DNA of 64,000 bases. Origin: Octopus bimaculoides. Lineage: Eukaryota. This document shows, one piece after another, positions 2,411 through 34,983 of this stretch; within the stretch, counting starts at the first letter, position 1, and each line of letters begins with the position of its first letter. The notes beneath the pieces were generated by a model, which did not search any database, was not told the origin of the DNA, and saw nothing but the letters and a program-made list of their open reading frames with translations. The DNA is taken from contig NC_068985.1 in NCBI RefSeq assembly GCF_001194135.2, positions 26,082,919 through 26,146,918 of the forward strand, given 5' to 3'. A program made the translations under genes and the position numbers.

Positions 2411-3272
2411 GCTGACATACCTGGTAATTCCCCGGAAAGGCGGGCTTATCCCTTGGTTCCGTTCTCATAATTGTTTCGCTAGTCCAGTAACAACAATACA
2501 AAGTATGTAGCCCTTAAAACGGTTTTTGTGTATTTATTGAGAATACCAAACTGTCTCACAAAGGATCTTGCTTTTTTAGAATTCCCAATAAGTTATGAAT
2601 ACCCAAATTGTGAAGTCAGTTATGTAATAACATGAAATTAATTACCCTATAATAAGAATTCAAATAAAGTAGCCCAGAAAAGGGCTTTAATACGTTCCTA
2701 GAGTATATAGAACATAGGAGGAAATACTAATAAGGTATGTATACTCTAAAATCATGAAACGTTACGTAATAACAGGCTAATCAGATATGAGATAATAACA
2801 ATTCAAAGTAATTAACTGTGAAAAGCTTATTCATGAATATACCAACACAAACACTTGTGTTGGTATATTCATGAATAAGTCACGAACTGAAATAAGTGGA
2901 TCTATTGTTTAGGAGAATACTATTTACTTGTTTAAGCGTTGTATTGGATAAATTGAGAAAATAACTAAAATAGTTCAAATACTAAGAAATAAGCATACTG
3001 AAAATGAATGAGTTATTTCCTTAGGTGGTTATTCCCAGGAGGAAAAGGGTTATTTCCCTCGGAAGCTTAAAAATTTTACTCCCACCCAAATGTTATTCCT
3101 CCCGCCATTTACCCAAACATTTTTTCGAAATCAATTTATACTTAAAACCTCCCCAGACACATAAGCAATGTGCGTGTGAAGTTTAAAAAATCGGTTGAGC
3201 CGTTTTGGTGCAAAATGAGGACATACCGATGCACACACACACACAGACATTTTCAGTTTTAATATGTAAGAT
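2406..3272 (+). mobile_element. Helitron-like non-autonomous element
   Basis: 5' TAGCTGAC...CCCGG and 3' (CA)n-CAGACATTTTCAGTTTTAATATGTAAGAT resemble the termini of Lep1-type Helitron derivatives; family assignment is by recall only. Confidence 0.45.
2826..2879. repeat. Perfect 25-bp inverted repeat with 4-nt loop
   Basis: CTTATTCATGAATATACCAACACAA-ACAC-TTGTGTTGGTATATTCATGAATAAG. Confidence 0.95.
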
Positions 3273-5695
3273 AAGAACAATAAACATGATCAGATTTATT
3301 AAAAAATTTATTCACAATTCTTGCAAAAGTGGTCGATAATTTCTCCAAAATCATTGAAAGCATAACAAATAAATAGAAAAGAGCAAAATGTATTTTATTG
3401 CTTCTTTATAGAAGAAATACATTAAAAAAAAAATTAGCAAGACCATTTATAACAAAATGAATGGACAGAAACAGTCAAAACTGTATGAAAAGACTACACT
3501 GCATGGAGTGCTATTCTAACCAGTGAATAATAGAACAGCAGCAAGAGCAGTTGTCAGTTATATACCAGAGGAAAAACAGGAACAACCATCTGACACTACA
3601 GTGAGGAATAAGAGGAGGAGACAGTAGGTACCTATTTCACATACCTCTGGTTCTTTTTAAGTAGAAATACCTATTTGAATAGCTGGTTTCAATCCTGGCA
3701 TGGCTAAGGTGTTGATTATCTTAATAATGACACTATTCTCATCATCAGGACTGTTTCAACTGGTTTACAGCAAAGGAAATAACACAGTTCAAATGGCGGT
3801 GGTGCTGTCATTTCACTACAAGAGAAAATAGAAGAAACTTCAAATAAGTATCATCTAATCATCTATGAAAGTTAACATATGTCAACACAATCTAAAAACA
3901 AACACCTTCATTGCACACCACATGTTCTAGCATAAACAATAGTTCCTGCTCAAATCAAAAAGAAATATCTTTTTGATTGGCTGTTATGAAAGACAAATTC
4001 AATTTTTTTTTAAAATTTGTAAATCACCATAAGACTAAAAATTCAACTATAAGATACAGCTCCCATATAATTGCCATCTGAATAAAAAAAAATGTGTGAA
4101 TAATCTAACAAAATGAATAATGTGAATCTAATAGATGACAGACAAATATTCTTAATTTATATTTGCAACACCATTTGTTAGTTTAAAAAATGGTACTGAG
4201 TAAAAATGATGATAAGGAATAAAAAATATATACATTAAGTTGCAAATTTTATTAATGAACACAAAAAATATGTGGTCAAGTAATATCTGAAGGAAATATT
4301 TTGTCAATTTTCAGAGCAATGAAAAACAAAAATGGTTTCAGGAAATACAGAAAACAAATCTATACCAACAGAAAATTTAAGAATATTTTCTATTGATTGA
4401 AAATGAAAAGAAAAATAAATGGTTTGGAAAATAATAATAATAATAATAAAAAAAAACTATTAGATTTGTTGTTCTGTTTTTATTTAACTCTATGATTTTA
4501 ATTAGATACAAAACATGATATACTTAAAACAAAATATGATGATAATGAAACAATACTTGTCATTCAAATTTTTGCAAGAAACCTTTCATCTAATATTTTT
4601 TTTTTTTATTATAATACAAGGAAAGTTTGTTTTCTTTATTATTTAGAGTCACTGAAAAAATAAATGACAAAAAAGTTTATATTTTACCCAAATAAGCTAA
4701 GTTAAAATTAGCCAACAATATTCTTTGGTTTATCCGAGTGAGGAAATTTTCAGTTAGCAAGGAGGAATCAGAATTTTATCAGTTTAGCATTTGAAACTAA
4801 TACTTTTTTTTTTTAAGAGGCAGCTGTATGCTTGTTGTTTACTAATAAAAATGTAGTAATAATAAATGTATTAAACTTATTTAAAAAAAGTACTTCTCAA
4901 AAAATCTTGCCATATAATGTAAGGCAATAATTTAAATGCATTTCTTTTTTCAAAAAAAAAAAAAAAATTTGTAAAGATATTTCAATAATAAATCAGTGCG
5001 CAAAATTTTCAGTCAAGGATACAGATTGAATTACGCTAAAAGTGATGGTACAGGGAAGGTGTCTGTATGTGCTGTCACCACCCCCCAGCAGTCAGTCAGT
5101 CAATGTCTTTAAACGCTTGGCCAGAGAAAGCTGCACTAACCTCTGTATGCTCATCAAATCCATACATGCAGTACTCACTCCCACGATCAGCAAACATTGA
5201 GTAGAAAGCTGGTAACAAGAGAATACCTTTAATACAAACCATCTAAAAGACATGATGGCCAGTGATGAACAACTAGTAATTCAGCTTTCATATAGGGAAC
5301 ATTTCAACTATCTACATTTAAATAGTTATACTAAAACTTAGAAACAATGAAAGTGTGAAGAATATCATAGTTGAAGTCAACACATGCAAATAACCTATTG
5401 AAACTGAAGTTGTTGAACCAAGAAATACTATAAAAATGCCCTACTGTTAAAAAGATTAAAAAAAAAAAAATGACCAATAAATAAATAAATAAAATGGAAA
5501 TAAATAATTTTATTTTGATAGATTATTACAAAATAGCAATTCTGACCAATTCTGAACCCAATTAAGTGGACTTTTGTAATATAATTTTGAAAAGTAAATT
5601 AAATAATCAATGGGGAAAGCAAAAAAAAAATGAAACTTTCAAAAGGTTGGTTTATGCTAATAAGGAAAGCAACATTCTAATTTATAAAAAAACTT

Positions 5696-5727
<32 letters not shown>

Positions 5728-8700
5728 TTCAGGTATATTTTGTATAACTACATTCAAATAGCTTTTGTGGTGATATAAATATACATAACTAATTTCAGTA
5801 TTAATATCCTTCACTTTATCACCAGTCTGGCCAGTCAATAACTGAATAAAATTTACATTATGAAATCATCAGTAGAAAAAGAATAGCTAAATACTAGAGC
5901 TAAATAGATATACAGTAAAATAGAAATTAGCACTAGTAATAAGCATATGCCCGTTTAAAAGAAAGGGATCAAGAAATAATTAATCAAACCTGTTAAAACT
6001 AAAATATCTAGAAAAATTGAAATTGGCAACATGTCTTTTTCATACATTAAAAAAAAAAAAAGCCATGCAAATTCTTCAAAACTGCAAAAAAAAATTCAAT
6101 CAAACAATGACCTCTAATATTCAAATTTAATCTGAAAGTTTCAATATGAAAAAAAGTTTGTAATACCAATATTATTATGCCAATAGAGTAATCAACTCAA
6201 AACTCTATTTTGGCAGAAAAATATGACGAGATTGTGACTGCAACATCGAAATCTTGGTTTGAGAAAATTCAAAAATGGGAACAAGGGGCATCAATGGAAT
6301 ATGACGGACTACAGAAGTGGTGAGTGAAAACTCCTCATTAGGATTGCTTATCTTCAGTGTGACAGAGCAGAATAAATGTAGCCATACCTCAAATAAAACT
6401 GTTCTCTGCCTGCTGCCAATACACTCCAAACTTGTACTCATACCAATAGATGAAAATGAACAAAGACAACAGCTGTTAGCAAGCAATCTACATTGCAATA
6501 AGTTTTGAGCCATTTGTGGTTGAAAATCAGAAAATGCTGTAAAAAGAAGTTGATATCAGCAGATTGATGAGTATCGAGTTGATATAGTTAATGCATTTGT
6601 GGCTGGCATAGCCTGAGTGAAACCAGCATAATACTTTCAGGAACAAACAGGGAATGATGCACTAATTTAAAACGAAATATTATTGTAATCCTCAAACTAG
6701 TCTCAGCTTTCAATCTTGCATTGGTTTTACCATGCTGGCATAGTTAAGTGACAAACTAAAGCACAGTATGAAAATGACATACTTTTCCAATTACAAAATA
6801 TCAGTTAAGCAAGAAAAGTACACTGAAAAGCCTATCCACAAAATTCAAGGCTTTGTCACATAAGTCAAATGCTTGGTGCCCATGTTTTATAAATGGAGCG
6901 TTTTACTATAAATTATGTGAAAAAATTATTACTGAATAATCAAGTGAATAATTACATGAAATATTTAATAAATTTTGAAAATATATCTTTAAAATATAAT
7001 TAGAATTTCTCTCAAAATATTAGCATCTTCATATAGTTCTATATTTATTTTCTCATGTTAGCACAAGTACTTTTCAACTAGGTAGTGTACCTACCCAAAA
7101 AAGGTAGGAATAGAACCTGGTATTAATCAGGCAACTGCTGCAAGTTGTTATATTTCTGTCCAAGAGCTATACACAATGGCTCAAGATCTGATGGTTCATA
7201 AAGTGAGTTCTTCAAAGCTTTAACCACCAGCCACTGTAATAACAAATCATTCTGTATCTTCTCCTGTAAATTGCTTTCGTAATTTGTTAAAAGAATTTTA
7301 ACAATACAATTTCATGTCAGAAACAATTCTTACACAGAAATAATTTATGAGACTACATAACTTCTTGTAGTATGCTTCAATCTAAAGTGTTTAGTTATAT
7401 CCATTTCAACTGATATACTAATCGAAGCTAATATTTTATTTGAATATATTTTGAAATTTAAAAAGTAAGTAGATAAACCAAAGGAAATGATTCTTTTGTT
7501 TCAACTCCAAAAATCTCAGGCTACCTATTTTTAAATACTGTTACATTTGCAAGTTTGTTCCCTTTTAATTCTAAATGCAGAAGGCCATCAACTCAGGATA
7601 CACTATCAGAATCCTGGCTTTTCACTTACCTTTAGATCTGAAAGAGAAAGTGTAAATCCCCAATGTGGAAGCATTAACATATATTTCAGATTCATCTTTT
7701 TTTATATTTCTTCTGCTAATGAGAACACAGAATAAGGCAATTTAGAGTGTGTTGCTGGTATATGAACGCAAACATACACACACACTCTTGGCTAAAACAT
7801 CTATCACAACCTAAATCATACATTCAACATAACATGGAAATGAATTTTATTTCTCCAAGTAAATATATACAAATCTGCACAAAACAGAATTCAGCAGGGA
7901 AGATAGTATAAATGAAGCCGCTTACATATCAATTATCTAAGACCAAAGAAATACCTGTATAGAGAGGCAAGCATCACTGGTGTCGAGGAAGCATTGAGGC
8001 ACCGTGGTCTCATGTAACAGATTGGTAGTCAAAGCAATGCTCTCAACATTGGCGACCGAGCAATTCAAACATGGTGCTGACAAAGATTGATAGAACTGCA
8101 TAAATAGAAATCTGTCTGTATCAGAAAAGAAACTGGTCAGACTATAGGCATGTGCTTATAATAAAACCACTGGAATGATGATGGTGTCTGTGCAGGAAAA
8201 TAAAATATTAAGGCCCCATTCAAACATAACATTAAACCCGGAATATACCAGTTAGGATTTTTTTTTCATGTTGATTGATGCAGTGGTTAAAAACTTTGTT
8301 AAATGTTTAAAAAGAAGAAAAAAAAAATGAAGTGACTAAGTTTTACTTGTTTATAAAATCAAATTTCGATGTAGGTTTTTGTAATTTTTTTTTTTTTTTT
8401 GCTGCAGAGTTATTTTGATGGAGCAGTAAATAACTATTATACAAGAAAGTTGATAAAATCTAATAGTTTTGGGGGTTTTTTTTTTAGTCTGTGCTTAAAG
8501 TGTTTATTAGAATAAAATATATTGCTCTTTTCAAGTACACATTTTTATGTTTCAGAGACATTTTCAAACTAGAGGTTATTTTTTAAAATTATTTGGAAGT
8601 AAACATAAAAGAGTTAATTTAATCTGATTTTGTAGTCAATTTTGAATATCAAAACATTGGCTAGTTTATATTTCATACCTATACTCAATGTTATGTGTAA

Positions 8701-9600
8701 AGGAAAGAAAGAAATTGTTTCTTTAAATTACACAACATTCATGTATTCATTTTAGACATCAAATGATATTAAAATGAAATATATAAAATGTCAATGCTAT
8801 ATTGAGTAATTAGAGAAATTGAGATTGAAAGACTAAAAATGAATTAAGGAACTCAATCTGGCTAATTTTTGAAGAAATAAGGGCTTTCCCCATACTCCTC
8901 AAATGAGTCAAGCTTCAGCTAAGTTAAAATAGAATTATTGTAATTCTACCAGTTTTCAAATCAAGTAAAATTGAATGTTAATATTTTCTGTGATTATTTT
9001 TCTAAAAACTACAAAATTCCTATTCCAGAAAATGAAAAAGAACTGTAACACAATTATCCCTTTTGATGACATCACTATTAAGAATTATCTTAATTCGATA
9101 CCAGTATTATTATGGACAATATCAAAGCATTCTTCATTCACACACATTATCATTAACAAAAATTACAAGCAGCAACAGATTAAGATATGTTTACCAGTTC
9201 TTCAATTATCAGCCAATTCATTATCGACCTTGAACACAGATCCATGAATGGGACTATAATGGCAGGAAGAAAATCTATTAAATATACTAAAGGATGAATA
9301 CAGGTTTAAGGGGTGGGGGAGCACAGGGAACAGTAGGTGCTGATGACATTTACCAAGTATATTGTTTAGAAGTGCCATGACAGTCTGTTTTACTTTACAG
9401 ACCAACATATTTGAGTGGCTGCCGTCTATTAGCTTGGTGTCTCTTGCTCAACTCCAATGGACGAACAAATAGACAGACGGACGGATGCATGCCAGTAGAG
9501 GTCACCACTTACCTCTGAATGAGCTGAAAGCAAGATCAGGTAAACCATTAGACAGTCACTTACCAGCATAGGTTGATCAGAAGCAGGCTAGATCAATCAT

Positions 9601-9755
9601 TCATTTAGTGTCACCTTCAGAATGTGTGCCAGTTTCTTCATTACTATCATCAATATCAGCACGGCTGTCTGATGGAATTTCACCATCTTCATATTTATCA
9701 TAGTGCATCATCTCCATATGCTGGGTGTTGTCATCGTTGTACATTAACTGCTTAT
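9601..9755 (-). CDS. LUC7L3: LUC7L3 coding exon 10 (acidic C-terminus, stop)
   Basis: AATCCAG| (D)KQLMYNDDNTQHMEMMHYDKYEDGEIPSDSRADIDDSNEETGTHSEGDTK-TGA. Confidence 0.85.
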
Positions 9756-12700
9756 CTGGATTTAAAATAAAATTGGAATACCTAAGTTCTAAAGATATAG
9801 ATTATATGATCTAAGAATTGCAATATTTTGTGATATTTCCTGGTCAAGTTTTCAATGTTTCTCTCCCATATATACAAATTATGTACAATTTTGTGCTTTA
9901 AATAGATTTTATACAATAAATGAATCACAGAAAATTATGAAACCAAAATTTACAAAAATGTAAAATGCAAGACATCCAAAATGCTGCAAACGTAAAGAGT
10001 AATTTTTTTTTGTTTTTATTTCAGCAGATATCGACATACTCGATGTCATTATATAGTACCAAAGCATAAACATCACACATCATGAATAAGAGGTTTTGAA
10101 TTTCATAATTCATGTTCAACACAATTGAAAACATTATACTTCATACAAATGCTAGACTTAACACACTTTCTTGATGGTTACATGATTAATTACATATAGG
10201 GATAAGATTTCATTAAAGATTGTCTTGCATGACAGAGCCATAAAACATTTCAGTCCCACTATATTATCAGTACTTAACCTATCAGGCTTAGCTCACTTTT
10301 GTCTTTTAGTTGCCAAAACAATCTGAAACTAGACCACTAGTATAAACTGTATGCATTTGGCCAGGGACCAATACATTGTTTACTTCAATGAGCATTTGAT
10401 TACTAAGGAACTGCTACCAAGCCAAGCTCAGTATGGAGTTGGATTACTGGAAAATAGATGAAGGTGTCAAAAGGATGTTGACATGTGTAGCCAACTATAC
10501 AAAGACAGGGGATTTTCATAATGGATGACAGTGGCTTCACAGAGCAACATTCCTAGAGATCATACATTCATATATAATCAATGTCATGAACACAATTACC
10601 AACAGTTATCACTAGTTATCAAATACCATGAAACAATAAGATCCTTAGTTTGTAGGGACCAATTTCACAACTACATAGAAAAAAATAAAATAAGCATAAT
10701 TGAAACGCATGAACAATTTGACTTGTCAAGCAAGTTTACATAACACTGGTATATCACTCACATGTTTTGGATAACTACATTCAACAGAGTACCACCCACT
10801 TTTTGAATAATCTCAACTCTTCTTAATAACACCTCCACCTGAACGCATACATTTCTCCAGCTACCTCTATAATATCTCATCCTTCTTGCCTTTAACCCTC
10901 CAACGCAGAGTATAGGCCACTTATAATTGAATTCCATGTCGCATAATTTTTCGCTTCTGTACTTATACTCTGCCATGAATATCCCCCTTTCTCTAGTTCC
11001 TTTTGTGTTGATCTACGCCACGAGTTCTTAGGCCTACCCATCTTTCTATATCCATCCGGATTCCACTGTAAAGCACTTTTCGCTGCATTTGGTGTGTCCT
11101 TTCTAAGTGTGCTACCAATCCACTTCCACTTTTTCTTAAATATTTGCTCTCTAATCGGAGCTTGATTCGTTCTTTGCCATAGCTCCATATTGCTTATGTG
11201 TTCGGGTCATCTGATTTTAAGTATACTATACTTAAACTAATTATTTCTCAATACTTCCTTTTTAATACTGTTTCAATTTGGGTAAGACTTCATTGGAACA
11301 ATGTTAATTACAGCAAAAATAATAAGCATTCAAAAGAAAACAGTGCAGTAATGAGGTGGCAGTGCTAGCTCTCTAAATTCTTAGAGATTTATAGGACCTT
11401 AGTATTTTAATATGCCTTCAAGAGCACATTTTTATTTCATGATATATATTGTACATAAGGATTTACAACATAGTTAAACTCTAATGCAAAGCAACTTATT
11501 TCAAATCTTAATTTATTGCTCCAAAATGTAAGTTCTAAAGCTATATGTTATTAATCTTGTGTGCAGTAGTAAATCTTATACATATAGTATACAAGCATGA
11601 AGATTTATGCATTCATATCATACACCTGCTTCAGGTCAGCCAGACAGATTCCATTCCACTCCACATTATAAACTGGAGAATATTCGTGTACATTCTGCCA
11701 ACTAATAAACATGCAATTACAGCACTCTTGCAGCTTATAACAGTAAATTGTATCTCCATTTAGTACTCGTATATATAATTGGGTAAACTAAGAATTGTCT
11801 TTAGCAGGGATACAGCTCAGCACAAATTAATCCTCTTCAGCCAATAAGCTGGCATCCCACCAATTTGGTCAGCTATAAACCACAAAATAGCTCAATAAAT
11901 AAAAATGACAAAATTAATAGTTAGCCGCACTGAGGCAGAATTATAAAAGTGTTTTATCTGATGATCAAAATTATAACTTACCATTTTCTAAATATAAAAT
12001 TTTCCTGTCACAATTATTGCCTGGTCGCTGCTTCGAATCATTACTATTTGAGTACTGCCTGGTTTCTTGGCTGAATGACCGATAACTTGAATCCTGACTA
12101 CCAGAGCGATGTTTAAGTTCATGACTCCTTGAATGATATTTACTTAGTTCATAGCTAGGTGAGCCATTTTTAGAATCAGGACTCCGTGATCTATATTTAG
12201 GTTCTTTACTACCTGATCTATGTTTAAATTCTCTACTCCGAGACCTTCTATGATGATTTGATTGACGAGAGGAATGACTTCTAGAACTAGAATGACTCCG
12301 TGAACGATGCCGACGAGCAATTTTATGTTTTTCTCTACTACTTGATCTTTGACATCGATGACCATGGCTTCTAGAACGTCTCTTCCTAAAAATACAAGAG
12401 AAAATAAATTAATGAATTTTTGAGGTTTGATTTTCTAAACCAAACTAATCCAGAAAATACAACATACTTTGGCATTTTTTTCAAGGTAACAGCAAAGTAT
12501 TTCAAATTTGGACAATGTATTATAAGGTTTTAGAATTTGATGACATTCATACTGCAAAGAACCCAAATGTGAAGTGAAAGTTGAATCTATTTCCAGCTTG
12601 ATGGAGTAAAGGAAACAATAATGCCCTTGACTAGAGAAAGATTTGGTTTTTTTTCGTTTTTCATTTTGTGGTCTTAAATGTGTTAAATTAATAGCCAGTG

Positions 12701-15700
12701 TGTCCACGTGTATGGATACATACAAACATAAAACAAAATATCATTCTCATATCTTCCATTCTTAGCTGCCTTCATCATCATCATCATCATCATTTAACGT
12801 TAGTTTTCCATGCTGGCATGGGTTGGACGGTTTGACTGGGGACAGGCAAGCCAGGAGGCTGCACCAGGCTCCAATCAAGTCTGGCAAGGTTTCTACAACC
12901 AGATGCCCTTCTTTAACGCCAACCACTCCGAGAGTGTAGTGGGTACTTTTTACGTGCCACCGGCACAGGATCCAGTCAGGTGGCACTGGCATCAGCCACG
13001 CTCGGATGGTGCTTTTTACGTGCTACCAGCACAGGAGCCAGTCAGGGAGGAGTGGCTGGCATTGACCGAGTTCAGATGGTGCTTTTTACATACCACCAGC
13101 ATGGGAAGCCAGTCAGGCAGCACTGGCATCGACCCATGCATGAATGGTGCTTATTGTGTGCCATCAGCATGCTTCCTCATGTTATTTTTCAAGTTCAAAT
13201 TGGTATCATTTTCATTTCTAATAGGATCTACATCAATGCTACAAATGTATATTTAACAGACATCATACTTCTTTTTAATACTCTGTTAGAATTTTTTTTT
13301 TTTTTTGGTTGCTAATGAACAAAAGTTTCCTAAACTTCTCATTAACACCATTTCTGCAATTTTCAATCCACTGGTCCAAAGTTGATACAAACTGTGATTA
13401 AATTTAACACCTAACTATATATAGGTTGAAAAGAACAATAGAGAGAAATAGCATTAATCAATAGAGGATGACACTGAAAGAGGCCAATGAAGTTATAACA
13501 ATGACTATAACTCAGAACTAAGCTCAAACTTCATTTTATTTGGGAAAACACCATGATAATTATTATTAATGCTATGATGCTAAAAATATGCAGTGCTAGC
13601 GTGGCAGAAATGATTGAGGAGATGTTAAAAGACTTTCAAAGAAAGATTAATCAAGATGATTCTACTGTAGTTACTACAGATTACTCTATCATTATTTATG
13701 ATTAGGAATAGTAAAATATAAATCTCTCTGAGAGATTTAGAAATGCAATATTTCTAATTTTGTAGATCAGTGACTTTATTTCACTTGAAATTCTATAAGT
13801 TTTCAAATGCAAATAAGCACCGACAGCTAGCAAGACAAGCTACTCCAGACTGATGAAGAGCAATAACTCTGAAACTAGTCTCTGGATGCTGGCTTTGCTG
13901 GGTGGAGGTGCTTATCTCCCCAGTTTGAAAACTTAAGAACACCTGTTATGTAGCCAACTGGAAACAATGTTTCCTAGGGCTAAATAGCAGTAGCATTCAT
14001 CCCTTTCCTGGGACTGCCACATTAAGTTGGCAACAAATCATCACTTTATCATGCTGCTACTGTATAAGTCGCTCTGAGAGATTTAGAAATGCAATATTTC
14101 TAATAAGACATTTCAGTTTAGTGGAAAACTTTTTCTATCAGAGCATATCTATTACCAATATTTATTACAGTCCTACATTCTTTATCTTGTGGTCTGTCTT
14201 GTTGACACTTTATAAATTTGGATGTTAACTTGGTTTCATGAGCTTTCATTCCTTTGTTAGCTAGATGGAATTGTTCTAGCTGTTGAAGTTGCCTTTCTGT
14301 GGGCCAGTGACCAAGCTAAGATATTTGCAGACTACCATAAACTGTCTTTGAATGATGCCCATTCAGTGTCGATTTGTTTAGCTGCCAGAAGAGCAAAGCA
14401 CATTTGGAGTTTAAACTTCAGGACTTGATTCTTTAAAAAAACGAGACACATAAGCATTTGAGTAGAGCCTCACAGAAGTTAACTTATAAATGTACATGAA
14501 GTTTTGCTTGCACTAGCAGCCCTCATCAGCAAAGCATAGTATGTAAAGCCACAAAGTACTAACAAACCTCTGCAAATGTAGTCAGGTGTGAGGTATCAGG
14601 TGATAAAACTGTGGAATGTGTTTTGATTACCACAAGCCAACTGGAAAGTGTAAAATAGATAAAGCGTTCAAGATTTTTACATCAAGTACCTAATGCAATA
14701 TGTCAACAAATTTAAATTTTAAGAGTAATCTGGTTCTATGTTAACAAATAAACATTTTTAGACTAGAGTAGCTTACAAGCATATCTTAGGAACATGCCTA
14801 GACATCAATTTTTGAAGAAAATTTGCATATGAATTTCTAGTCAAAGGATATTCCCACCAACATTATGTTGGGAGCTTAAAGTAACATCTCCATCTGCATT
14901 AACCCCTGCAATTAATACAAACTGGTCTACTTTTCCATCTGGCAAATACCAGTAATTGCCTGCTAGAATGCTAGGGCTATAACAGCTTGAATGCCAAAAC
15001 TTAATGAAGAAATCAGTTTCAAAAGGATTTGGAATTGACTGGATACTGGCATCAGAGATGTAAGGCTCAGTACAGTATATATTATACAACCTTTACTGAA
15101 ATGGGTAGAAAATCATCTTTGCCAAAAATAGTCAAACCCGACAGTCAGTAATTCTGTAGAAAACTGTTTCAACATTTGCATTAAAACTGCTTAGAAAAAT
15201 TGTCAGTTTTGTGTCCTTTGAAATTATGCTCTAGTATAGTAGGAGATGGCTATACTAGAGCAAAATGCACACTCTTTTAAAAAAATCTAACACTTAAAAA
15301 CTTAATTTGAATATATTTGATAATTTGTTATGAATGTTTAATGAAAAATTGGTGTGAGCTGATGGTGGAGAGGATCTCAATTGTAGAAGTAGACCAAAGT
15401 AAACATAGATACATGTAATGAAGATAAACATAAATAAATGTAACTGAAACAAATGATCCAAAGCCATGGATAGATGTGATACAGACAAACCAGTGAAACC
15501 CATAACAGTGTAAAAACAGACTCTCAAATGACAACGAGAAAACTTCAAGTCATAAAAACAAAACTACCTTTCTCTGCTTCTACTCCTCCTGGTTCGACTA
15601 CGGCTACGCCGCCGTCGTTTTTCTCGTTCTCTTTGCCTCTCCCTTTCTTTCTCCCTTTCCTTTTCTTTCCTACGTTTCTCTTCTCGTTCTTTCTCTTTTT

Positions 15701-18700
15701 CCCGCTCTCTTTCTTTTTCACGTTCTTCTTTCTCTCTGACAAGTCTAGCTTCTCTTTCTTCTGCAGATTGTAACTTTCTCTAATATAATATACAAATAGT
15801 ATAATTAATAGAAATAACCAAATACAAAATATTTGATTCTCCAAAGATTATTTATTACTACATTTAAACTTTTCTAAATTATCATTACATTGACGGGTAT
15901 AGAGCACAGGTTAAATTATATAAATTGAGAGGACAATCAGAGGTAAGTTTAAACTTTTAACTGTTGCTTTTTTTAAATAGGTGCAGTATTCAATCATTAA
16001 CCTCTGTCTGTTAGAAAAATAAGTAGCACGAAAGGAAAAGTTTTATTTTTCTCAAACAATAGACAAGTGGCTTCATTATTCATTGAAACAAATTCAACTG
16101 CATTTTGCTCTAACAAAAACAGTGCATGATCGGAAAACAGTTTTTTGCTCTTGTTAATTTTTAACTTGTTGTTATTGCTGCTTGCTTAGCCAACAAAATC
16201 AATAACTCACTTTTCATGCTTCAGTTTGCAACAAATGCCAATGGGAAAGGTTTTTACAAATGAATGAGAGAGAAACAATGTCTCCTCACAAACACATTAG
16301 ATTTCAACAAATAATTGCTTCTCATTAACATTGTTCCAATTCAATATAGGAAAATCATGAGAGCATGCATAGCAAAACACTGATCATGGTAATACTTTTT
16401 AAATATGAAACTGTCAAATATCCTGAATAGTTATCTATTGGTTACTACTTAAACTACTTATATGAGCAAAGAATGGTCTGTCATTTAGATACCAGTATTA
16501 AAAAGTATTTTCCAAAATATTTCAAGCTTGAAATTTTGCTCTATATCAAAGTGTTAAAAATATAAAAATCAAAGATAAATACATTGAAGAGTTCTTCACA
16601 TATGTAATAAAAATGATTTTACAAAAACTACAAATGTTCTGATGCCACAAACCTGCTTTCTTTCTTCAACATATGTTCTGATTCTTGCATAACCAGAATG
16701 TTGTTTTCCCATGATATGTTCATCAATACGCTGCTGAATATCTCCAACAACAAGGAGTGCGCCACATACATTACACACTTCCATGGTTTTTTCACTTTCT
16801 GGTGTTTGACTGTTTTGCCGGGTTTGCTGAAATGAAAAGATGATTTCAATAAATTATACAAACTAATGCACATCCAGTAGATGTCTTATAATAAAAAAAA
16901 TTTTTTTAATTACCACACACATTTCAAACTAATGCAAAATTGATGAGAATTGCAGTGACATTTTCAGAATATTAATAATTTCAAATTATTTATTTTAAAT
17001 ATTATTTTCCACACAGGAGAGAAACGGCATGTTATGTCATTAGTCCCTTTTAATCTTTTAGCATTCAGATTACTTTGTCAAATCTTATGCTTGCTTATTC
17101 ACATTGTTTTAAATTAATCATGTATTATCTCATAAGTTTGAGATTTTGATGATATGATTGTCAATTTTAAGGAATAACATTGTAGGAAAGATGTGAGAAG
17201 CTGGATCTGGATAAGTTTGAAGATAAAACAGGTAGAATATGTTGGCTAGATAGAGCCAGTTTGAATGCCAAAGGGTTAAAATAATAGTAGCCCTAATTCT
17301 TCCTCTCCTAGTATTTTTAACATTTTTGCTTTTTATATTTACCTCATAGAATAGACAGGTCCATAGATTTACTAATTTATTTAATTGTTTGAATAACTTT
17401 CATGTAGAGCTTCCATCAATCAAGCTTGATCATACATCTGCATGTGTATCAACAAGCTTTTCAAGGAAGACAAGCAGTTGCCCATGCAGGCCAAGTATCC
17501 CCTCTTTACACCAGTGTTTATCCGAGGAAAAGACCACAGAGTCAGGTCGATAAAGCTTGATATTGTTGTCAAAACACAGAGTCAGGACAGATACTGTGAG
17601 GCATAGGTATCATACCAGGCCTTCTAACAATTTCACTAATCCATAGCCCAGGATTGGTATTTTCTTTTTAACTACACAGAAAGGATGAAAGATAAAGCCT
17701 CCACAGGATTTGAACTCAGAATGTAAAGAGTTGAAACAAACACTGAGGCATTGTATCCAACACTCTAAACTGCCATTTCACCAATCATAGGTAGATATAC
17801 TCCAACCTAATGGTAGCTGCTTAACTCCACATATATGGTTTCACATCCATTTTCTGCTAAGACAAATAAGTATAATTTAGAGTAATGTATCTGGTTAAAA
17901 ATGCAACAATGCTAAAAGCTAATATTCATTTACTCACCATAAGAATTCATACAATATCAAATAGTTATTGCAAATTAAAATTGCTAAATTTTTTTGCAGC
18001 CCCCATATCATTAATTTTTGAAAGTGGTCAATTTTCTTTTCTGTAAACTAAATGGTCAGTTTCTTTTATTAGACTGAATTATAAAAGATAAACGTAATTG
18101 ATGAGTTACATTTTTTGTTATTATGTTTTGTTATCCTACATATGCCAAAGCACTCATTCTTGCTTTATAAAATGCCAACTATCTTGTACTTTTCTGAAAT
18201 TTGACATTGTAGATTAAAAAATGTCTCCATAATTCAGTGCTTGGTTCTGGATTTAGAGGTTTTAAGTAAAGGAGAGACAAGTATTTCCTAAATAGAATGC
18301 CAGTGGCATTTCCGCCAAGACAGAATATTCTAGTAAAAGCAATAAAACACCTGCCTGCAACATATATAAACTCTTAGCTATTCCATTTGTAAAAGGACAT
18401 ACAAAACATCATAAAAATGAGCAAAAAGTTAAGATACAATTGTTTGGTATTTTAACAGAAAATCTTTCAAAAATATAAATTTCTTAATCAGAATAAGACT
18501 ATTTTCAGCTTACATTTTCTAAAACTTTCCTCTCCTCCCTTAGTAAATCACATAATTTCATAACACCTTGAGCTTCTTCAACTTTTCCTTCACAACCCAA
18601 ATTTTCTGCCTGAGAAAATAAAAAAAACAAATGCAATAAAATAAATCCAATCTAACTTGAAGAGGTAATTAAGAATAGATATGAGTGATCCATTCATATC

Positions 18701-21700
18701 GGTGCAAAGGAAATATTCAAATGTTTGATAACAATGCAGACTAGTTTGACACTGACACAAATCAGACATACAGACAAATAGAAATTTATGAAGAGAGAGA
18801 GAGAGAGTCATGTAATATACTGCTATATAAACAAAATCTATTACTTGTTTTTCATATATATAAGCCATAATTTTTTATTTATTTATTTATTTCTGAAATA
18901 TGTTAGGCTTAATTGAAAGACTACAAACAGTTCGTAGGAACAATTTTTCTGTGCATGTAGTTTAAAACAAATTAAGATAATATTGATTTCAAATTTTGGC
19001 ATAAGGCCAGTAATTTCGGGGGAGGGAGGAAGTTGATTACTATCAACCCCAAAAGGATGAAAGGCAAAATTGGCCTCAGTGGAATTTGAACTCAAAATGT
19101 AGTGACAGATGAAAAGCTGCTAAGCATTTTGCCCAGTGTACTAACAGTTCTGCCAATTCACTGCTTTAAAAATTAAGATAATATTGAGCAGTTATTTGGC
19201 ATCAAGGCGATGTAATCAATTGAATGTGACATGAACAAATTTAATACTAATCTTCTCAACAAGCCACTACCTTAATTTCATTAACTGGATTGTAAAAATT
19301 TAAGGTTAATAAAGTTCTAAATCACTGAATGAAGATACTTCAATATTAAGCTTTCTCAAACTATTCTTGGTTCTTCAAGCAAAAAAAAAAAAGTTTTCAA
19401 TCTAAATATGAATACTATTTAAAACTATTGTTGGTTCTTTCAAGTTTCAAATGAAATTAAGCTAGATAACTCAACTTCTATAGATAGACAACATTCAGTT
19501 GGAAACTATAGGATATTTTTATAAAAGTTATGGCAAACATTAAATTATACAGATGTTCTCATCAACTGACTAAGATGTTTATCATGCTGTTTCTAGCTTA
19601 GAGTAATCAATGTAGTTACAAGTATTATTTATACAAACTATTTTATTGAAAAGAATACCTACACTTACAAAGCAACCAATTTAATCAGACACCAGTCAAT
19701 GTAACTTTTGGGCCATGAGAAAAGCAAACGTACAATGGTATGTACTGAATACTTTATAGTTGTTTTTATTTACAGCACACCAAATTTGTACATCAGGCTA
19801 GAATAATCTTCAAAAGATTGTTCAAATGATATAATCTATTTTTTTCTACGATACTCAAGATGAACTCACCAAATGCTAATTCTTCCTTGATAGTGTAATT
19901 AGTACATACCTGTTGAACTAAATCATTAATCCGTTCAGTTAACATGGCAACTTTTTCTTCTTTCAGAGCAGCAGCATTGCTTGAAGGCTGGAGATAAACA
20001 AATAGTTCAGATAAAAGTTTTTTTCAAAACAGCCATGTAAGTTAACATTCATTACCAATACTGCCCAAGACCATTCTTTGTCCTACCTATGCTACCAATC
20101 CACAGAAGCTGCCTGTATTTTTCTGGTCAATTAAATCTAAATTTATATCAGTGATAATACAAGATTTCACTAGGTAAAGATTTTGTAATACTGTTACAAT
20201 TTGTCCTCTGAAATTTTGGTCATTTTTCTCCACACCCATTTTTTAAAATCATTTCTGTAATACTCTCTACCCTTTTTAATATGGATACCAGCTTCAAATT
20301 TAGGAGCAGTAACTCGAAATTTGAAGTGTTTTTGAAAGAACAAATGCAGCAGCATGTGAAAAATACAACCATAATCAAGTGGATGATTATATATCAATTT
20401 CTGAGAGTGGAAACAACTCAAACAACAAGAGTGAAAACAACAATAAATTGATAACAGAAGCAGAATGAAGTGAAACGTTTTAAAATATTTCTTTCCCATT
20501 CTAATTAGTGTTCCTGTTTATTGATAAAAAAAAATACTGATTACTTCTTTTAACAATGTAAGTGTCCCAGACAATCAACATGGAGACCATAAATAAAGAG
20601 TAAAAAAGAACAAATAAAGTCCCAGATACTTAGATGAAATTCAGACATTTTTGTCATAAATATTAATAAATGGATAAAAGAAATTAGGCCAATGGGCTAC
20701 CAATTTGCAGCTCTGATGAATCTTACTTGTAGCTACTCACACATGTATTTCAAAACCAAGTCAACATTTTCATATATGTGACTAATAGTACACTATTTGG
20801 GAAAGGAAACTATGGCTTGTTGTTCAAAATACGACCCCTAATGGACACTTTACAAGACACTTCAGTTCTATTAAAAGCCTTGAAAATCATGATAAAGGTT
20901 GTTCACAGGTGAAAGACGGTAAGGTATAAAAGCTAGATATGTTTCTAACAAAATATGGCATGAAGGTTTGGAAGACTTATGAACAGATGTTGGGTACTGC
21001 TGTAGGTTTTATTTTTGAGAAAAAAAAAATTTAAAAAAAAATGTGCAAGTCAGCATGGCCTGAAATATGGTGTGGTACGGAAATCATCACTTCCATACTA
21101 TAAACAACACCAAATATTTTTTTGACTAGTATTTCTCTTTGGTCAAGTATGTAAAGGCCTTAGAAGTTGTAATAACATATACAGATGTCATAAGGATGCA
21201 AATAAATAAAGAGGGTGTTGATGAATATATAAAAAATAAAAATTAAAACAAAGTAGGGAAATAATCCAACAGCAAAAAGGAAATTTGCTAGTGAGTGTAG
21301 AAACAAGAGTCACAATAAATTTCTGTCCATATATGTTCAACCACTTAAAGATATAAGTGGCACACCATTTCTAAAATTCCATCAAAGCAGTTCAATTGAG
21401 GCAATATAGATTGATTAAACTGAACTATGAGCTTTTACGAGGTAGACCTGGTGGCAGCAACACTTGCTGTGATATACAGTAAATATGAGTACTGACAAAA
21501 TTTTTTTTTAAATTTTGTTAATAACCAAATCACAAAGAGTACGAAAGCAATGTACTCAGCTGCAGAATTGAGCTGAGGACAAGCTTTTCCTCAAAAAAAA
21601 AAAATCTACAGAGAAATATCCTTTTAAATTTGACTAACTTCATAATAGTTGCAAGATAGCATACTGAGAATGCAAATAGCAGAAATGGAAAGCAACCCAA

Positions 21701-34455: not shown

Positions 34456-34778
34456 TTTGGAAACAAATTAGGACAAGATGACGATGTTTTCTCCGATATT
34501 AGAATTTCTTTTTTATATTTCATCAGCAATAAAAAAAGTATCACATAATTACAATCGAATTTCCAAAATATGCCAAATACTTAAGTTACGATAAAATGAC
34601 GTACATTTATTTTGAAAATGCGTAAATAACACGGCGATCGGGAACTTCCGTTACAAATCGGGCACGAGACAACACGCATGTCTCTTATTTGGATCGTGAC
34701 GTCACGAAAGATCCACACGCGGTGTCCGTGCAGAGTTCAGCAAATTTTAGAGGAGACTTTTTAACAGAAAAAACACTT
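34456..34778. promoter_or_regulatory. Bidirectional promoter / 5' UTRs shared by LUC7L3 and eRF3
   Basis: 323 bp between divergent ATGs; locally CpG-rich; 14-bp palindrome TCGTGACGTCACGA (CRE core, 34694-34707); ETS-like ACTTCCG (34644-34650); YY1-like CAAAATGGCG overlapping the LUC7L3 ATG. Confidence 0.8.
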
Positions 34779-34983
34779 ATGGCCTCTGAAGATAATGATA
34801 ACAGTGCCCCAGACTCCTGGGAACAAAGTCTGAATGATTCTCCTGAAAACGAATCGAGTTTGGATGAATTAAATTCTACTTTATCTTACTTAAATGTTAA
34901 TGCTGCAGAATTCGTTCCTGGTCAAAATGTACATGCTCCTGAATTCGTACCTTCGTTCATGAAAGATCCTGAAAGTCTACAAG
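34779..34983 (+). CDS. GSPT1: eRF3 exon 1 with tandem PAM2 (PABP-binding) motifs
   Basis: [16 protein letters not shown]...[23 protein letters not shown]...; donor AAG|GTAATT. Confidence 0.9.

What the first reader, a model, noticed from the sequence alone, without database searches (positions are those of the whole stretch)
9507..9625. Exon-side-strong 5' splice site hidden in the last codons of LUC7L3, followed by an 11-nt microexon and two perfect U1 sites: candidate autoregulatory switch
Seen: the C-terminal codons S-E-G-D-T read TCT GAA G|GT GAC ACT, giving a donor AAG|GTGACA at 9614 with a full exon-side match and weak intron side. Exactly 91 nt downstream is an acceptor with branch-like CTAAT and TCTTGCTTTCAG (9524), then an 11-nt microexon CTCATTCAGAG (9513-9523, in frame: AHSE) ending in GAG|GTAAGTG. 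A second perfect donor, CTG|GTAAGTG, lies 37 nt after the stop (9563), only 40 nt from that acceptor, so the two are probably mutually exclusive. Established: LUC7 proteins are U1-associated, and LUC7L3 has been reported to favour 5' splice sites with stronger exon-side consensus. Recalled, to be verified: human LUC7L3 also ends ..KSEGDTQSN and has an isoform diverging at SE|V, which would imply the same GAAG|GTGAC donor. Inference: LUC7L3 abundance controls use of this donor, removing its own stop codon and routing the mRNA to alternative C-termini or NMD, possibly conserved across bilaterians.
Basis: partly seen in the sequence, partly recalled or inferred. Interest (0 to 1): 0.8.

Follow-up and report, generated by a model that had tools for sequence, protein, structure and literature searches.

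The report
Ancient splice-site cluster at LUC7L3's stop codon
The end of a cephalopod gene for the splicing factor LUC7L3 carries a tight cluster of splice signals around its stop codon that recurs, almost base for base, in snake, clams and a millipede, so it is very probably an old regulatory switch, although what sets the switch is still untested.

Summary
The gene is a 10-coding-exon LUC7L3 orthologue on the minus strand of an argonaut-like cephalopod.

The signals form one module:
- D1: AAG|GTGACA inside the S-E-G-D-T codons, exon-side strong.
- D2: G|GTAAGTGA, 37 nt after the stop.
- A: a branch point plus acceptor.
- A 6-17 nt mini-exon followed by a third donor, D3.

Snake, two bivalves and a millipede have the same module. 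In bivalves the D1 motif lies after the stop codon or in another reading frame, so the constraint is on RNA, not protein.

New here: D2 is the regular donor of a 3'UTR intron, shown by spliced mRNA contigs of two other cephalopods. The branch point sits 15 nt from D2, so A can only pair with D1 or upstream donors. D1-to-A splicing is annotated in reptiles, birds and mammals (KSE|VQRKY...).

Not supported: a conserved microexon reading frame (11, 16 and 17 nt in cephalopods), stop-codon removal as the conserved outcome, and NMD from the D1/D2 choice alone. D1 use in cephalopods and control by LUC7L3 dose remain inference. A second, 97%-conserved 233-nt candidate 3'UTR exon (8187-7955) would give an NMD-type isoform.

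The parts
9601..34455 (-). LUC7L3 orthologue, coding part. The 10 exons are 34455-34351, 29258-29192, 27044-27005, 23869-23731, 19987-19910, 18609-18514, 16826-16653, 15779-15568, 12385-11982 and 9755-9601. The product is 489 aa.
   Evidence: tblastn probe. GT-AG model with an intact ORF. Pfam PF03194 LUC7 at E = 1.8e-80. 94% identity to A. hians luc7-like protein 3. Spliced mRNA contig L008 matches every exon.
9609..9617 (-). D1: the donor AAG|GTGACA inside the codons GAA GGT GAC. The first intron G is at 9614. It is exon-side strong (left-handed).
   Evidence: Sequence. 5'SS Balance -2 and U1 duplex -6.6 kcal/mol. The core GAAG|GTGAC is identical in cephalopods, snake, two bivalves and millipede, whatever the reading frame. 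The orthologous donor is used in annotated vertebrate isoforms.
9601..9603 (-). Stop codon TGA of the main reading frame.
   Evidence: It lies 37 nt upstream of the D2 junction.
9556..9566 (-). D2: the donor CTG|GTAAGTGA. The first intron G is at 9563. It is the regular donor of the 3'UTR intron.
   Evidence: mRNA contigs L008 and L009 read ..CTACAG|TGAAGCAGCAAC. Genomic L006/L007 of a sister species reads ..TTTTACAG|GTAAGTGACTG, and transcript-derived P0130 of that same species carries the junction. U1 duplex -9.9 kcal/mol in the window; -9.9 to -12.9 across the loci.
9547..9551 (-). Branch-point motif CTAAT. The branch A is at 9548, which is 24 nt from the acceptor, 15 nt from D2 and 66 nt from D1.
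   Evidence: Sequence. A YTNAY motif sits at the same position in relatives: CTGAC in L006, CTAAC in Mactra.
9524..9540 (-). A: pyrimidine tract and acceptor CCTGATCTTGCTTTCAG|.
   Evidence: CTCTTGCTTTCAG is invariant in four cephalopods. An acceptor stands at the equivalent place in snake (used in annotated isoforms), Mactra, the L012 bivalve and millipede.
9513..9523 (-). M1: 11-nt mini-exon CTCATTCAGAG.
   Evidence: Its ends are conserved but its length is not: 11, 16 and 17 nt in cephalopods, 8 in bivalves, 6 in snake, 14 in millipede. It is not seen in any assembled cephalopod mRNA.
9505..9515 (-). D3: the donor GAG|GTAAGTGG. The first intron G is at 9512.
   Evidence: TCAGAGGTAAGTGGTGACCTCTACTGGCATGCATCCG is invariant in four cephalopods. 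U1 duplex -11.8 kcal/mol. GTAAGT follows the acceptor in snake and both bivalves; the millipede has GTACGT.
9472..9504 (-). Conserved intronic tail of the module.
   Evidence: The block 9614-9472 is 97.9% identical to A. hians, against 85-87% for coding exons.
3816..9563 (-). Inferred 3'UTR intron (5748 nt), from D2 to the acceptor tctcttgtag|TGAA.
   Evidence: Donor use is shown in relatives. The acceptor is inferred. The exon after the junction begins TGAA in L008, P0130 and the window, and L008 1689-1777 matches window 3694-3604 at 89%.
3380..3815 (-). Inferred terminal 3'UTR exon. Its first codon after D3 would be TGA. AATAAA signals lie at 3399-3394 and 3312-3307, and the 3' end is uncertain.
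7955..8187 (-). Candidate alternative 3'UTR exon of 233 nt. Acceptor ttattttcctgcacag| (AG at 8189-8188). Donor CAG|GTATTT (GT at 7954-7953), which is left-handed with Balance -2.
   Evidence: 97.4% identical to A. hians, while the flanking intron cannot be aligned. There is no long ORF on either strand. Including it puts the stop 270 nt upstream of the last junction. No transcript evidence was found.
7622..7650 (-). M2: a second unit of acceptor, 8-nt mini-exon and GTAAGTGA donor (ctttctctttcag|ATCTAAAG|GTAAGTGA). The exon is 7637-7630.
   Evidence: A. hians has the same unit: ctttctgtttcag|GTCAAAAG|GTAAGTGA.

Best explanation
The finding is a real and very old alternative-splicing module that straddles the stop codon of LUC7L3. 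Its four signals are these:
- D1, a weak exon-side-strong donor (GAAG|GTGAC).
- D2, a near-consensus donor (G|GTAAGTGA) 23-53 nt downstream of D1.
- A, a branch point and acceptor 40-54 nt after D2.
- D3, another U1-type site (GTAAGT; GTACGT in the millipede), 6-17 nt after A.

Shown:
- D2 is the donor of a 3'UTR intron in the main cephalopod mRNA. The stop lies 37 nt before that junction, so this mRNA should escape NMD.
- A's branch point is too close to D2, so A can pair only with D1 or an upstream donor.
- D1-to-A, and upstream-exon-to-A, splicing is annotated in reptiles, birds and mammals.
- The signals are conserved more tightly than the coding sequence, and independently of reading frame.

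Inferred:
- The module is a homeostatic switch in which D1 competes with D2.
- U1 bound at D3 activates A by exon definition, as described for U1-70K.
- LUC7L3 favours exon-side-strong donors in human cells, so high LUC7L3 would shift splicing from D2 to D1-A. It would also favour inclusion of the conserved 233-nt exon 8187-7955, whose donor CAG|GTATTT is likewise exon-side strong.
- The D1-A route replaces the normal 3' end (..SEGDTK becomes ..SEAHSE or ..SEVK). Together with the extra exon it gives mRNAs whose stop lies 182-270 nt before the last junction. By the 50-nt rule of vertebrate NMD, these would be decay substrates.
- The terminal intron may also simply be held unspliced.
For: Anatomy and coordinates.

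D2 in use: spliced mRNA contigs L008 and L009, and genome (L006/L007) plus transcript (P0130) of one species.

Conservation within cephalopods: the splice signals are invariant while the coding sequence upstream diverges. The module is 97.9% identical to A. hians and exon 8187-7955 is 97.4%, against 85-87% for coding exons; neutral introns cannot be aligned.

Conservation across phyla, with spacing and Balance scores: snake, Mactra, bivalve mRNA L012, millipede, summary table. The motif pair is unique in each locus.

Independence from reading frame: in Mactra the stop TGA lies inside CTGAAGGTGAC in another frame. In L012 the whole motif follows a TAA stop. Snake and cephalopod share all five synonymous third positions of TCT GAA GGT GAC ACT, which is about 1 in 384 if codon choice were free.

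D1-A in use: snake isoform X1; horse, beaver, bat, goat, birds and turtles. A centipede gene model diverges at KSE|.

Terminal intron retained in an otherwise spliced bivalve mRNA.

Literature: LUC7L3 promotes left-handed 5'SS. [quoted passage not shown] The U1-70K alternative 3'SS needs an adjacent cluster of 5'SS and intact U1 snRNP (PMC3798272).
Against: - No cephalopod or other mollusc transcript using D1, A, M1 or exon 8187-7955 was found. All assembled cephalopod contigs and cluster members end ..GDTK or use D2.
- The D1/D2 choice alone leaves the stop within 50 nt of the last junction, or in the last exon.
- In bivalves both donors lie after the stop, so the consequence there cannot be a change of protein, nor NMD by the 50-nt rule.
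- Whether molluscan NMD depends on exon junctions is unknown.
- The microexon frame is not conserved.
- Dependence on LUC7L3 is extrapolated from human cell data.
- The window's distal acceptor (3816) is inferred from a weakly alignable UTR.
Confidence: 0.55

Rival explanations
1. U1 docking without splicing. D1, D2, D3 and M2 would be conserved mainly as U1 snRNP binding sites. They would suppress premature cleavage and polyadenylation inside the 5.7-kb 3'UTR intron. Alternatively they would mark unspliced or intronically polyadenylated transcripts for nuclear retention and decay. A and the mini-exons would be by-products.
For: There are three GGTAAGTG sites on the gene strand and none elsewhere in the window. 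AATAAA signals lie inside the intron, for example at 7851-7846. Intact 5'SS motifs in mature mRNAs cause U1-70K/ZFC3H1-dependent nuclear retention (PMC9074902). The mini-exons are absent from assembled mRNAs.
Against: This does not explain the deep conservation of the branch point, pyrimidine tract and AG of A at a fixed distance. It also does not explain the weak D1 core, nor the annotated use of D1-A in vertebrates.
Confidence: 0.17
2. Decoy exon with a detained intron. The A-M1-D3 pseudo-exon would engage U2 and U1 non-productively next to D2. This would hold the terminal intron unspliced in the nucleus, to be released when needed. On this reading D1 is secondary.
For: The bivalve mRNA contig L012 is spliced throughout the CDS but retains the terminal intron right through D2, A and D3. 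The pseudo-exon is too short for normal exon definition (6-17 nt). Decoy exons of this kind are described for SF3B1 and OGT (PMC6097662 and PMC12017769, listed). LUC7L3 transcripts show intron retention in human tumours (PMC7733475).
Against: One assembled contig is weak evidence of regulated retention. Described decoys usually lie deep in introns longer than 1 kb, not 40 nt from the donor. The invariance of D1 is left unexplained.
Confidence: 0.13
3. Stepwise (recursive-type) removal of the long 3'UTR intron. M1 and M2 would be transient mini-exons that never reach the mature mRNA.
For: There are two units of identical design: pyrimidine tract, AG, 8-17 nt, GTAAGTG. In bivalves the mini-exon begins with GT, so a donor is rebuilt at the junction. 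Neither mini-exon is found in assembled mRNAs.
Against: M1 cannot be reached from D2, because the branch point is only 15 nt away. In cephalopods, snake and millipede the mini-exon does not start with GT, so no donor is regenerated. The intron is only 5.7 kb.
Confidence: 0.07
4. Protein-level constraint only. The C-terminal peptide SEGDT would be what is conserved, and the GT inside GGT would be incidental.
For: SEGD(T/S) is the C-terminal motif in vertebrates, gastropods, cephalopods, a brachiopod and a millipede.
Against: Bivalves keep CTGAAGGTGAC after the stop or in another frame. All synonymous positions are identical between snake and cephalopod. D2, A and D3 lie outside the ORF and are equally conserved.
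Confidence: 0.02
5. A conserved RNA secondary structure, for example a helix masking D1, would be the selected feature rather than the splice signals.
For: D1 can pair with the acceptor or mini-exon region in A. hians (p = 0.016) and in Mactra (9 bp, p = 0.064). The snake segment folds better than shuffles (z = -2.2) and contains a 9-bp hairpin between the stop and D2.
Against: The partner position differs between lineages. The window, another octopod, snake, L012 and millipede show no excess pairing (p = 0.15-0.56). Whole-module folding z-scores are positive in cephalopods and millipede. There is no Rfam match.
Confidence: 0.05

Closest known systems
Autoregulatory exons of the paralogues LUC7L (PTC exon) and LUC7L2 (AE2), described in Kenny et al. 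2025 (PMC11842720)
   Same: The same gene family is involved. A conserved alternative splicing unit inside the factor's own gene carries a donor whose 'handedness' matches the preference of the protein that would regulate it.
   Different: Those are internal cassette exons near the 5' end with right-handed donors, and they are validated by minigenes. This one is a tandem-donor, acceptor and mini-exon cluster at the stop codon with a left-handed donor, and it is untested. [quoted passage not shown]
[quoted passage not shown]
   Same: Both sit in the gene of a U1-associated protein. An alternative acceptor is followed closely by U1-type donor motifs. The proposed logic is the same: U1 occupancy activates the acceptor and gives a non-standard mRNA for homeostasis.
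   Different: In U1-70K the unit is internal, its product is a proven NMD target and it depends on U1C. Here the unit overlaps the stop codon, and its immediate products are not NMD targets by the 50-nt rule.
Ultraconserved poison exons and 3'UTR introns of SR-protein genes (named from established knowledge: Lareau et al. 2007; Ni et al. 2007)
   Same: Non-coding parts of a splicing-factor gene are conserved more strongly than the coding sequence. A 3'UTR exon would, if included, place a junction far downstream of the stop (8187-7955).
   Different: No transcript or NMD evidence exists here. The D1/D2/A/D3 cluster itself is not a poison exon.
Exitrons (introns inside coding exons; named from established knowledge: Marquez et al. 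2015)
   Same: In the snake locus D1 and A lie 105 nt apart. If the main vertebrate isoform leaves this stretch unspliced, both would sit inside its last coding exon and the D1-A intron would be spliced optionally.
   Different: The excised piece contains the stop codon and 3'UTR. In cephalopods A lies in the intron downstream of D2, not inside an exon.
Decoy exons in detained introns (SF3B1, OGT; PMC6097662, PMC12017769)
   Same: A conserved, non-productive exon-like unit lies inside an intron that can be retained (L012).
   Different: Its position is 40 nt from the donor, it is only 6-17 nt long, and an upstream alternative donor is present.

Membership tests
LUC7L3 orthologue (LUC7 family, LUC7L3 subfamily) | LUC7 N-terminal domain with its two zinc-finger motifs | tested here: met
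   Pfam PF03194 at E = 1.8e-80, residues 5-245. CKYFLCGFCPHELF and CNVCGALLVVGD..HIMGKQH are present in the model.
LUC7L3 orthologue (LUC7 family, LUC7L3 subfamily) | Closest relatives are proteins annotated LUC7L3, and the C-terminal half is rich in RE and RS repeats | tested here: met
   The named hits among the top 120 are annotated luc7-like protein 3 or carry generic names; none is named LUC7L or LUC7L2. The best is A. hians at 94% identity. RE/RS-rich exons 8-9 are present.
Left-handed 5' splice site (Kenny et al. 2025) | More consensus matches at -3..-1 than at +4..+6 (5'SS Balance of -2 or lower) | tested here: met
   D1 AAG|GTGACA scores -2 in cephalopods, snake and L012, and -1 in Mactra and millipede. 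Donor 7954 CAG|GTATTT scores -2 (hand count by the definition); D1 values are.
Left-handed 5' splice site (Kenny et al. 2025) | Use rises with LUC7L3 and falls with LUC7L/LUC7L2 | not testable with these tools
   This needs perturbation RNA-seq or minigenes.
Alternative splicing coupled to NMD (autoregulatory unproductive splicing) | The alternative event is conserved at nucleotide level beyond the coding sequence | tested here: met
   The module is 97.9% identical and exon 8187-7955 is 97.4%, against 85-87% for coding exons. The module recurs across phyla.
Alternative splicing coupled to NMD (autoregulatory unproductive splicing) | The alternative isoform has a stop more than 50-55 nt upstream of the last exon junction | tested here: inconclusive
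   Not met for the D1/D2 choice: 37 nt, or the stop falls in the last exon. Met in silico only if exon 8187-7955 is included: 182-270 nt.
Alternative splicing coupled to NMD (autoregulatory unproductive splicing) | The isoform accumulates when NMD is blocked and responds to the dose of the gene's own protein | not testable with these tools
   No expression data could be reached.
U1-70K-type acceptor activated by adjacent 5' splice sites | An alternative acceptor is followed closely by one or more U1-type donor motifs | tested here: met
   A is followed after 6-17 nt by a U1-type donor motif (GTAAGT; the weaker GTACGT in the millipede) in all 8 sequences.
U1-70K-type acceptor activated by adjacent 5' splice sites | Acceptor use requires U1 snRNP binding to those motifs | not testable with these tools
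   This needs antisense blocking or U1 depletion.
Recursive splice site | The acceptor is directly juxtaposed to a donor (AG|GT), so that a donor is regenerated after the first step | tested here: not met
   In cephalopods, snake and millipede the mini-exon starts with CT, TG and CT. Only the two bivalves have AG|GT. M1 cannot be reached from D2.
Exitron | Both splice sites lie inside one annotated coding exon | tested here: not met
   In cephalopods A (9524) lies downstream of the used donor D2 (9563), that is, in the intron. In the snake locus D1 and A lie 105 nt apart in one stretch; whether this is a single exon of the main isoform was not checked.

The most novel reading that the evidence does not exclude
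This module is the missing autoregulatory element of LUC7L3. It would be a sensor more than 550 million years old, kept from the bilaterian ancestor. In it the protein that favours exon-side-strong donors chooses between such a donor (D1) and a consensus donor (D2) at its own stop codon, and so sets its own level and the cell's balance between the two classes of 5' splice site.
Probability: 0.35. Interest if true: 0.8.

Novelty: new variant of a known kind. Interest (0 to 1): 0.66.

Why it matters
LUC7 proteins were recently shown to split 5' splice sites into two classes. LUC7L and LUC7L2 have known feedback exons, whereas the same study found none in LUC7L3.

A compact element conserved across phyla and independent of reading frame, sitting at the LUC7L3 stop codon and built around an exon-side-strong donor, is a concrete candidate for that missing feedback. 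It can be tested at once with existing human knock-down and over-expression RNA-seq and with simple minigenes.

It also shows that a 'conserved C-terminal peptide' (SEGDT) can be the shadow of an RNA signal. And it corrects the gene model: the cephalopod gene has a 3'UTR intron and probably alternative 3'UTR exons.

Tried and rejected
1. Stop-codon read-through or A-to-I editing. P0123 and P0130 show W where the genome has TGA. This is a gene-caller artefact (TGA read as W): the locus is flagged 'translates_to_query: no' and the DNA has TGA.

2. Logan contigs L001-L004, which carry the window's exact last-exon peptide, were hoped to be transcripts. They are colinear with the genome, including intron 9, and about 90% identical by blastn (93% mean column identity), so they are genomic contigs of a close relative.

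3. Conserved RNA structure. Whole-module folds give z = +1.1 and +1.5 in the two cephalopods and +1.4 in the millipede, -2.2 in snake and -1.7 in Mactra. The D1-partner duplex test gives p = 0.016-0.56 with shifting partners. No consistent support.

4. Known RNA families. The Rfam E-value scan of 3000-12500 gave only a sub-threshold SNORD113-like hit in intron 9.

5. The related mRNAs do not contain the 8187-7955 sequence.

6. A microexon reading-frame constraint looked plausible at first (11 versus 17 nt). The 16-nt version in A. hians removes it.

7. An antisense gene under the conserved block 8239-7800. There is no long ORF on the plus strand.

8. Two look-ups were lost because only the longest isoform of a gene is indexed, or the product is not on record.

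9. The literature searches found no description of this element.
Full report
**1. What is in the window**

The finding lies on the minus strand. A tblastn probe located seven LUC7-type exon matches between 34431 and 16635. It was used only to find exons and is not itself evidence.

Open-frame inspection added the RE/RS-rich exons and the last coding exon. GT-AG boundaries give a clean 10-exon, 489-aa model from 34455 to 9601.

- The model carries the Pfam LUC7 N-terminal domain at E = 1.8e-80.
- Its best database hit is luc7-like protein 3 of Argonauta hians at 94% identity over the full length. Molluscan and vertebrate LUC7L3 follow.
- The window is therefore from an argonaut-like octopod.

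**2. The observation**

- D1: AAG|GTGACA inside GAA GGT GAC, with the intron G at 9614.
- Stop TGA at 9603-9601.
- D2: CTG|GTAAGTG, with the G at 9563, 37 nt after the stop.
- CTAAT at 9551-9547.
- Acceptor A ending at 9524.
- The 11-nt CTCATTCAGAG at 9523-9513.
- D3: GAG|GTAAGTG, with the G at 9512.

GGTAAGTG occurs three times in the whole window on both strands. That number is not unusual. But all three lie on the gene strand within 2 kb after the stop. The third (7630) follows another acceptor plus an 8-nt unit.

**3. D2 is a used donor: there is a 3'UTR intron**

A search with the last-exon peptide found Logan contigs from related cephalopods.

- L008 and L009 are spliced LUC7L3 mRNAs. 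L008 matches every coding exon of the window.
- After the stop they read ..GATCTAGCCTGCTTCTGATCCCATCTTCTACAG|TGAAGCAGCAAC...
- Genomic contigs L006/L007 of a third species read ..CTGCTTCTGACCCGTCTTTTACAG|GTAAGTGACTG.. at the same place.
- A transcript-derived member of the same protein cluster (P0130, 7 contigs) carries the junction ..TAC AG|T GAA GCA GCA ACA.

So the donor orthologous to 9563 is used in the main mRNA of two cephalopods.

In the window, the conserved 3' part of those UTRs maps to 3694-3545 (89% over the blastn match 3694-3604). The nearest upstream acceptor is tctcttgtag|TGAAATGAC, with the exon starting at 3815. Like the relatives' exon, it begins TGAA. The inferred intron is 9563-3816 (5748 nt).

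The stop lies 37 nt before this junction, inside the 50-nt limit.

**4. Conservation among cephalopods**

I aligned the window, a close relative (L001), A. hians (L005) and the third octopod (L006/L007).

- The coding part of the last exon diverges (73-82% at protein level).
- Four stretches are invariant:
  - TCTGAAGGTGACACTAAATGAATG.TTGATCTAGCCTGCTTCTGA
  - GGTAAGTGACTGTCT
  - CTCTTGCTTTCAGCTCAT
  - TCAGAGGTAAGTGGTGACCTCTACTGGCATGCATCCG
- The interior of the mini-exon is not conserved. It is 11 nt in the window and L001, 16 nt in A. hians (CTCAT duplicated) and 17 nt in L006/L007. Its reading frame is therefore not conserved.

Block identities against A. hians:

| Block | Identity to A. hians |
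|---|---|
| Coding exons | 85-87% |
| Module 9614-9472 | 97.9% |
| Ordinary intron | cannot be aligned |

**5. Conservation across phyla**

| Locus | Sequence around the stop |
|---|---|
| Snake (L010) | TCTGAAG\|GTGACACTCAGTCCAATTAA, 32 nt, ACAGAG\|GTAAGTGC .. ttgttactgtttaacag\|TGCAGC\|GTAAGTATG |
| Clam Mactra (L011) | GAA ACA AAC TGA AG\|GTGACTTAATAAATGGATGATAAG\|GTAAGTGA .. ctctaac .. cctttgtag\|GTTACCAG\|GTAAGTGA |
| Second bivalve, mRNA contig (L012) | CAT TAA ACTGAAG\|GTGACATTATAATGGATGTACAG\|GTAAGTGA .. ctgttgtag\|GTTCACAG\|GTAAGTGG |
| Millipede (L013) | AGT GAA G\|GT GAC TGA, 31 nt, GAAG\|GTAAGTGA .. gagacgtcag\|, 14 nt, GTACGT |
| Marine metatranscript (L014) | GCA G\|GT GAC ACA AAA TGA |

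The parameters of the module are as follows:

| Feature | Value |
|---|---|
| D1 5'SS Balance | -2 or -1 |
| D1 U1 duplex | -6.6 kcal/mol |
| D2 5'SS Balance | 0 or +1 |
| D2 U1 duplex | -9.9 to -12.9 kcal/mol |
| D1-to-D2 spacing | 23-53 nt |
| D1-to-A | 63-105 nt |
| D2-to-A | 40-54 nt |
| Mini-exon | 6-17 nt |

In each locus the pair GAAGGTGAC plus GGTAAGTG within 90 nt is unique.

In Mactra the stop TGA sits inside the motif in a different frame. In L012 the motif follows the stop. The conservation is therefore on the RNA signal, not on the peptide SEGD. Snake and cephalopod also share all five synonymous third positions of TCT GAA GGT GAC ACT.

**6. Which pairs can splice**

The branch A (9548) is 24 nt from A's AG, 15 nt from D2 and 66 nt from D1. 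A can be used only with D1 or an upstream donor.

Vertebrate annotation shows both cases.

- KSE|VQRKY.. is D1-to-A. It is 105 nt in the snake and is also found in horse, beaver, bat, goat, birds and turtles.
- ..KSKEK|VQRKY.. is upstream exon to A. It is found in bonobo, chicken and turtle.

In vertebrates the D3-like GTAAGT stays in the mRNA as the codons CGT AAG TAT. It may therefore act as a U1-binding enhancer of A rather than as a donor. A centipede gene model diverges at KSE| too, but I had no DNA to check it.

**7. Consequences in the window**

| Splicing route | Result |
|---|---|
| D2 to 3815 | ..SEGDTK*, stop 37 nt before the last junction |
| D1-A-M1-D3 to 3815 | ..SEAHSE*, with TGA as the first codon of the terminal exon |
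| D1 to 3815 | ..SEVK* |

None of these is an NMD substrate by the 50-nt rule. In bivalves the choice cannot even change the protein.

**8. A further conserved unit**

Between the window and A. hians, the only other alignable blocks of the 3'UTR intron are 8239-7673 and 7691-7547.

- Inside the first is a 233-nt candidate exon (8187-7955). Its acceptor is ttattttcctgcacag| and its donor is CAG|GTATTT, which has Balance -2 and so is again exon-side strong.
- This exon is 97.4% identical, and the next 80-90 nt are 95% identical.
- There is no long ORF on the plus strand or the minus strand.
- Including it would put the normal stop 270 nt, or the D1-route stop 182 nt, before the last junction. 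That is the classical poison-exon geometry.
- The second block holds M2: ctttctctttcag|ATCTAAAG|GTAAGTGA. A. hians conserves it as ..cag|GTCAAAAG|GTAAGTGA.
- I found no transcript evidence for either unit.

**9. Mechanism**

Shown:
- There is a conserved four-signal module.
- D2 is used.
- A is restricted to D1 or upstream donors.
- D1-A is used in vertebrates.

Inferred: D1 competes with D2. U1 at D3 helps define A. This is the logic demonstrated for U1-70K, where an alternative 3'SS needs an adjacent 5'SS cluster and intact U1 snRNP (PMC3798272).

In human cells LUC7L3 promotes left-handed donors and represses right-handed ones. [quoted passage not shown] This makes a LUC7L3-sensitive switch the most economical reading. 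The left-handed donor of exon 8187-7955 would supply the decay arm.

I put 0.55 on 'homeostatic splice switch' and about 0.35 on the specific claim of autoregulation by LUC7L3.

**10. Rivals**

- U1 docking for suppression of intronic polyadenylation, or for nuclear retention of unspliced RNA (PMC9074902).
- Decoy exon with a detained intron. L012 retains the terminal intron in an otherwise spliced mRNA.
- Stepwise intron removal.
- Conserved RNA structure (inconsistent).
- Pure protein constraint (refuted).

**11. Known or new**

Feedback by alternative splicing in splicing-factor genes is well known. The vertebrate KSE|V isoforms are in RefSeq-type annotation.

I found no paper describing this module, its conservation across phyla, or a LUC7L3 feedback element. 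The searchable library is not complete, however. I rate it a new variant of a known kind.

**12. Limits**

- I had no read-level RNA-seq.
- The species of the Logan contigs are unknown.
- The window's distal acceptor and terminal exon are inferred.
- The 50-nt rule may not apply in molluscs.

Noticed in passing
window 7955-8187 (minus strand), with flanks 8239-7866: A 233-nt non-coding candidate exon is 97.4% identical to A. hians, more conserved than the coding exons. It has a good acceptor and an exon-side-strong donor CAG|GTATTT. An 80-nt conserved intron follows, then a further acceptor (AG at 7876-7875) and AATAAA at 7851-7846. It could be a poison exon, or part of an alternative terminal exon.
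   Followed up: partly
window 7622-7650 (minus strand); L005 about 27720-27775: A second unit of pyrimidine tract, AG, 8 nt and GTAAGTGA (M2) has the same design as the reported microexon. It is conserved in A. hians, with 8 nt in both species.
   Followed up: partly
L012 1278-1682 (bivalve mRNA contig, Logan SRR31116221): The whole CDS is spliced, yet the contig runs unspliced through D1, D2, A and D3 and about 320 nt beyond. This suggests a retained or detained terminal intron in that bivalve.
   Followed up: no
P0123 and P0130 (from L006 and sister contigs): Database proteins show W at genomic TGA codons, giving apparent read-through of the LUC7L3 stop. This is a gene-calling artefact (TGA translated as W), not editing or read-through. 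It is useful nonetheless, because P0130 'translates' the 3'UTR and so reveals the D2 junction.
   Followed up: yes
window 10895-11206 (minus strand, intron 9): A 104-codon open frame (..[37 protein letters not shown]..) looks like the C-terminal tail of a non-LTR retrotransposon ORF2. It has no Pfam hit.
   Followed up: partly
window 10553-10622 (minus strand, intron 9): A weak C/D-box snoRNA-like match (SNORD113 family) scores 23.7 bits against a gathering score of 36, with E = 0.55. It is probably chance.
   Followed up: no
L010 26513-26545 (snake): A perfect 9-bp hairpin, CTGATCTGA-TATGACC-TCAGATCAG, sits between the stop codon and D2. The cephalopods have only TTGATC..GATCAA at the equivalent place, and it is not conserved in the third octopod.
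   Followed up: partly
window 9564-9600 (minus strand): The 37-nt 3'UTR stretch kept in the mature mRNA contains TTGATCTAGCCTGCTTCTGA. This is invariant in all five cephalopod sequences, including the mRNAs, but absent from snake and bivalves. It may be a lineage-specific binding site.
   Followed up: no
window 34456-35194; L005 5249-6000: The region just upstream of the LUC7L3 start is about 80% identical to A. hians. There, an eRF3/HBS1-like GTPase gene lies head-to-head with LUC7L3, so the two may share a bidirectional promoter.
   Followed up: no
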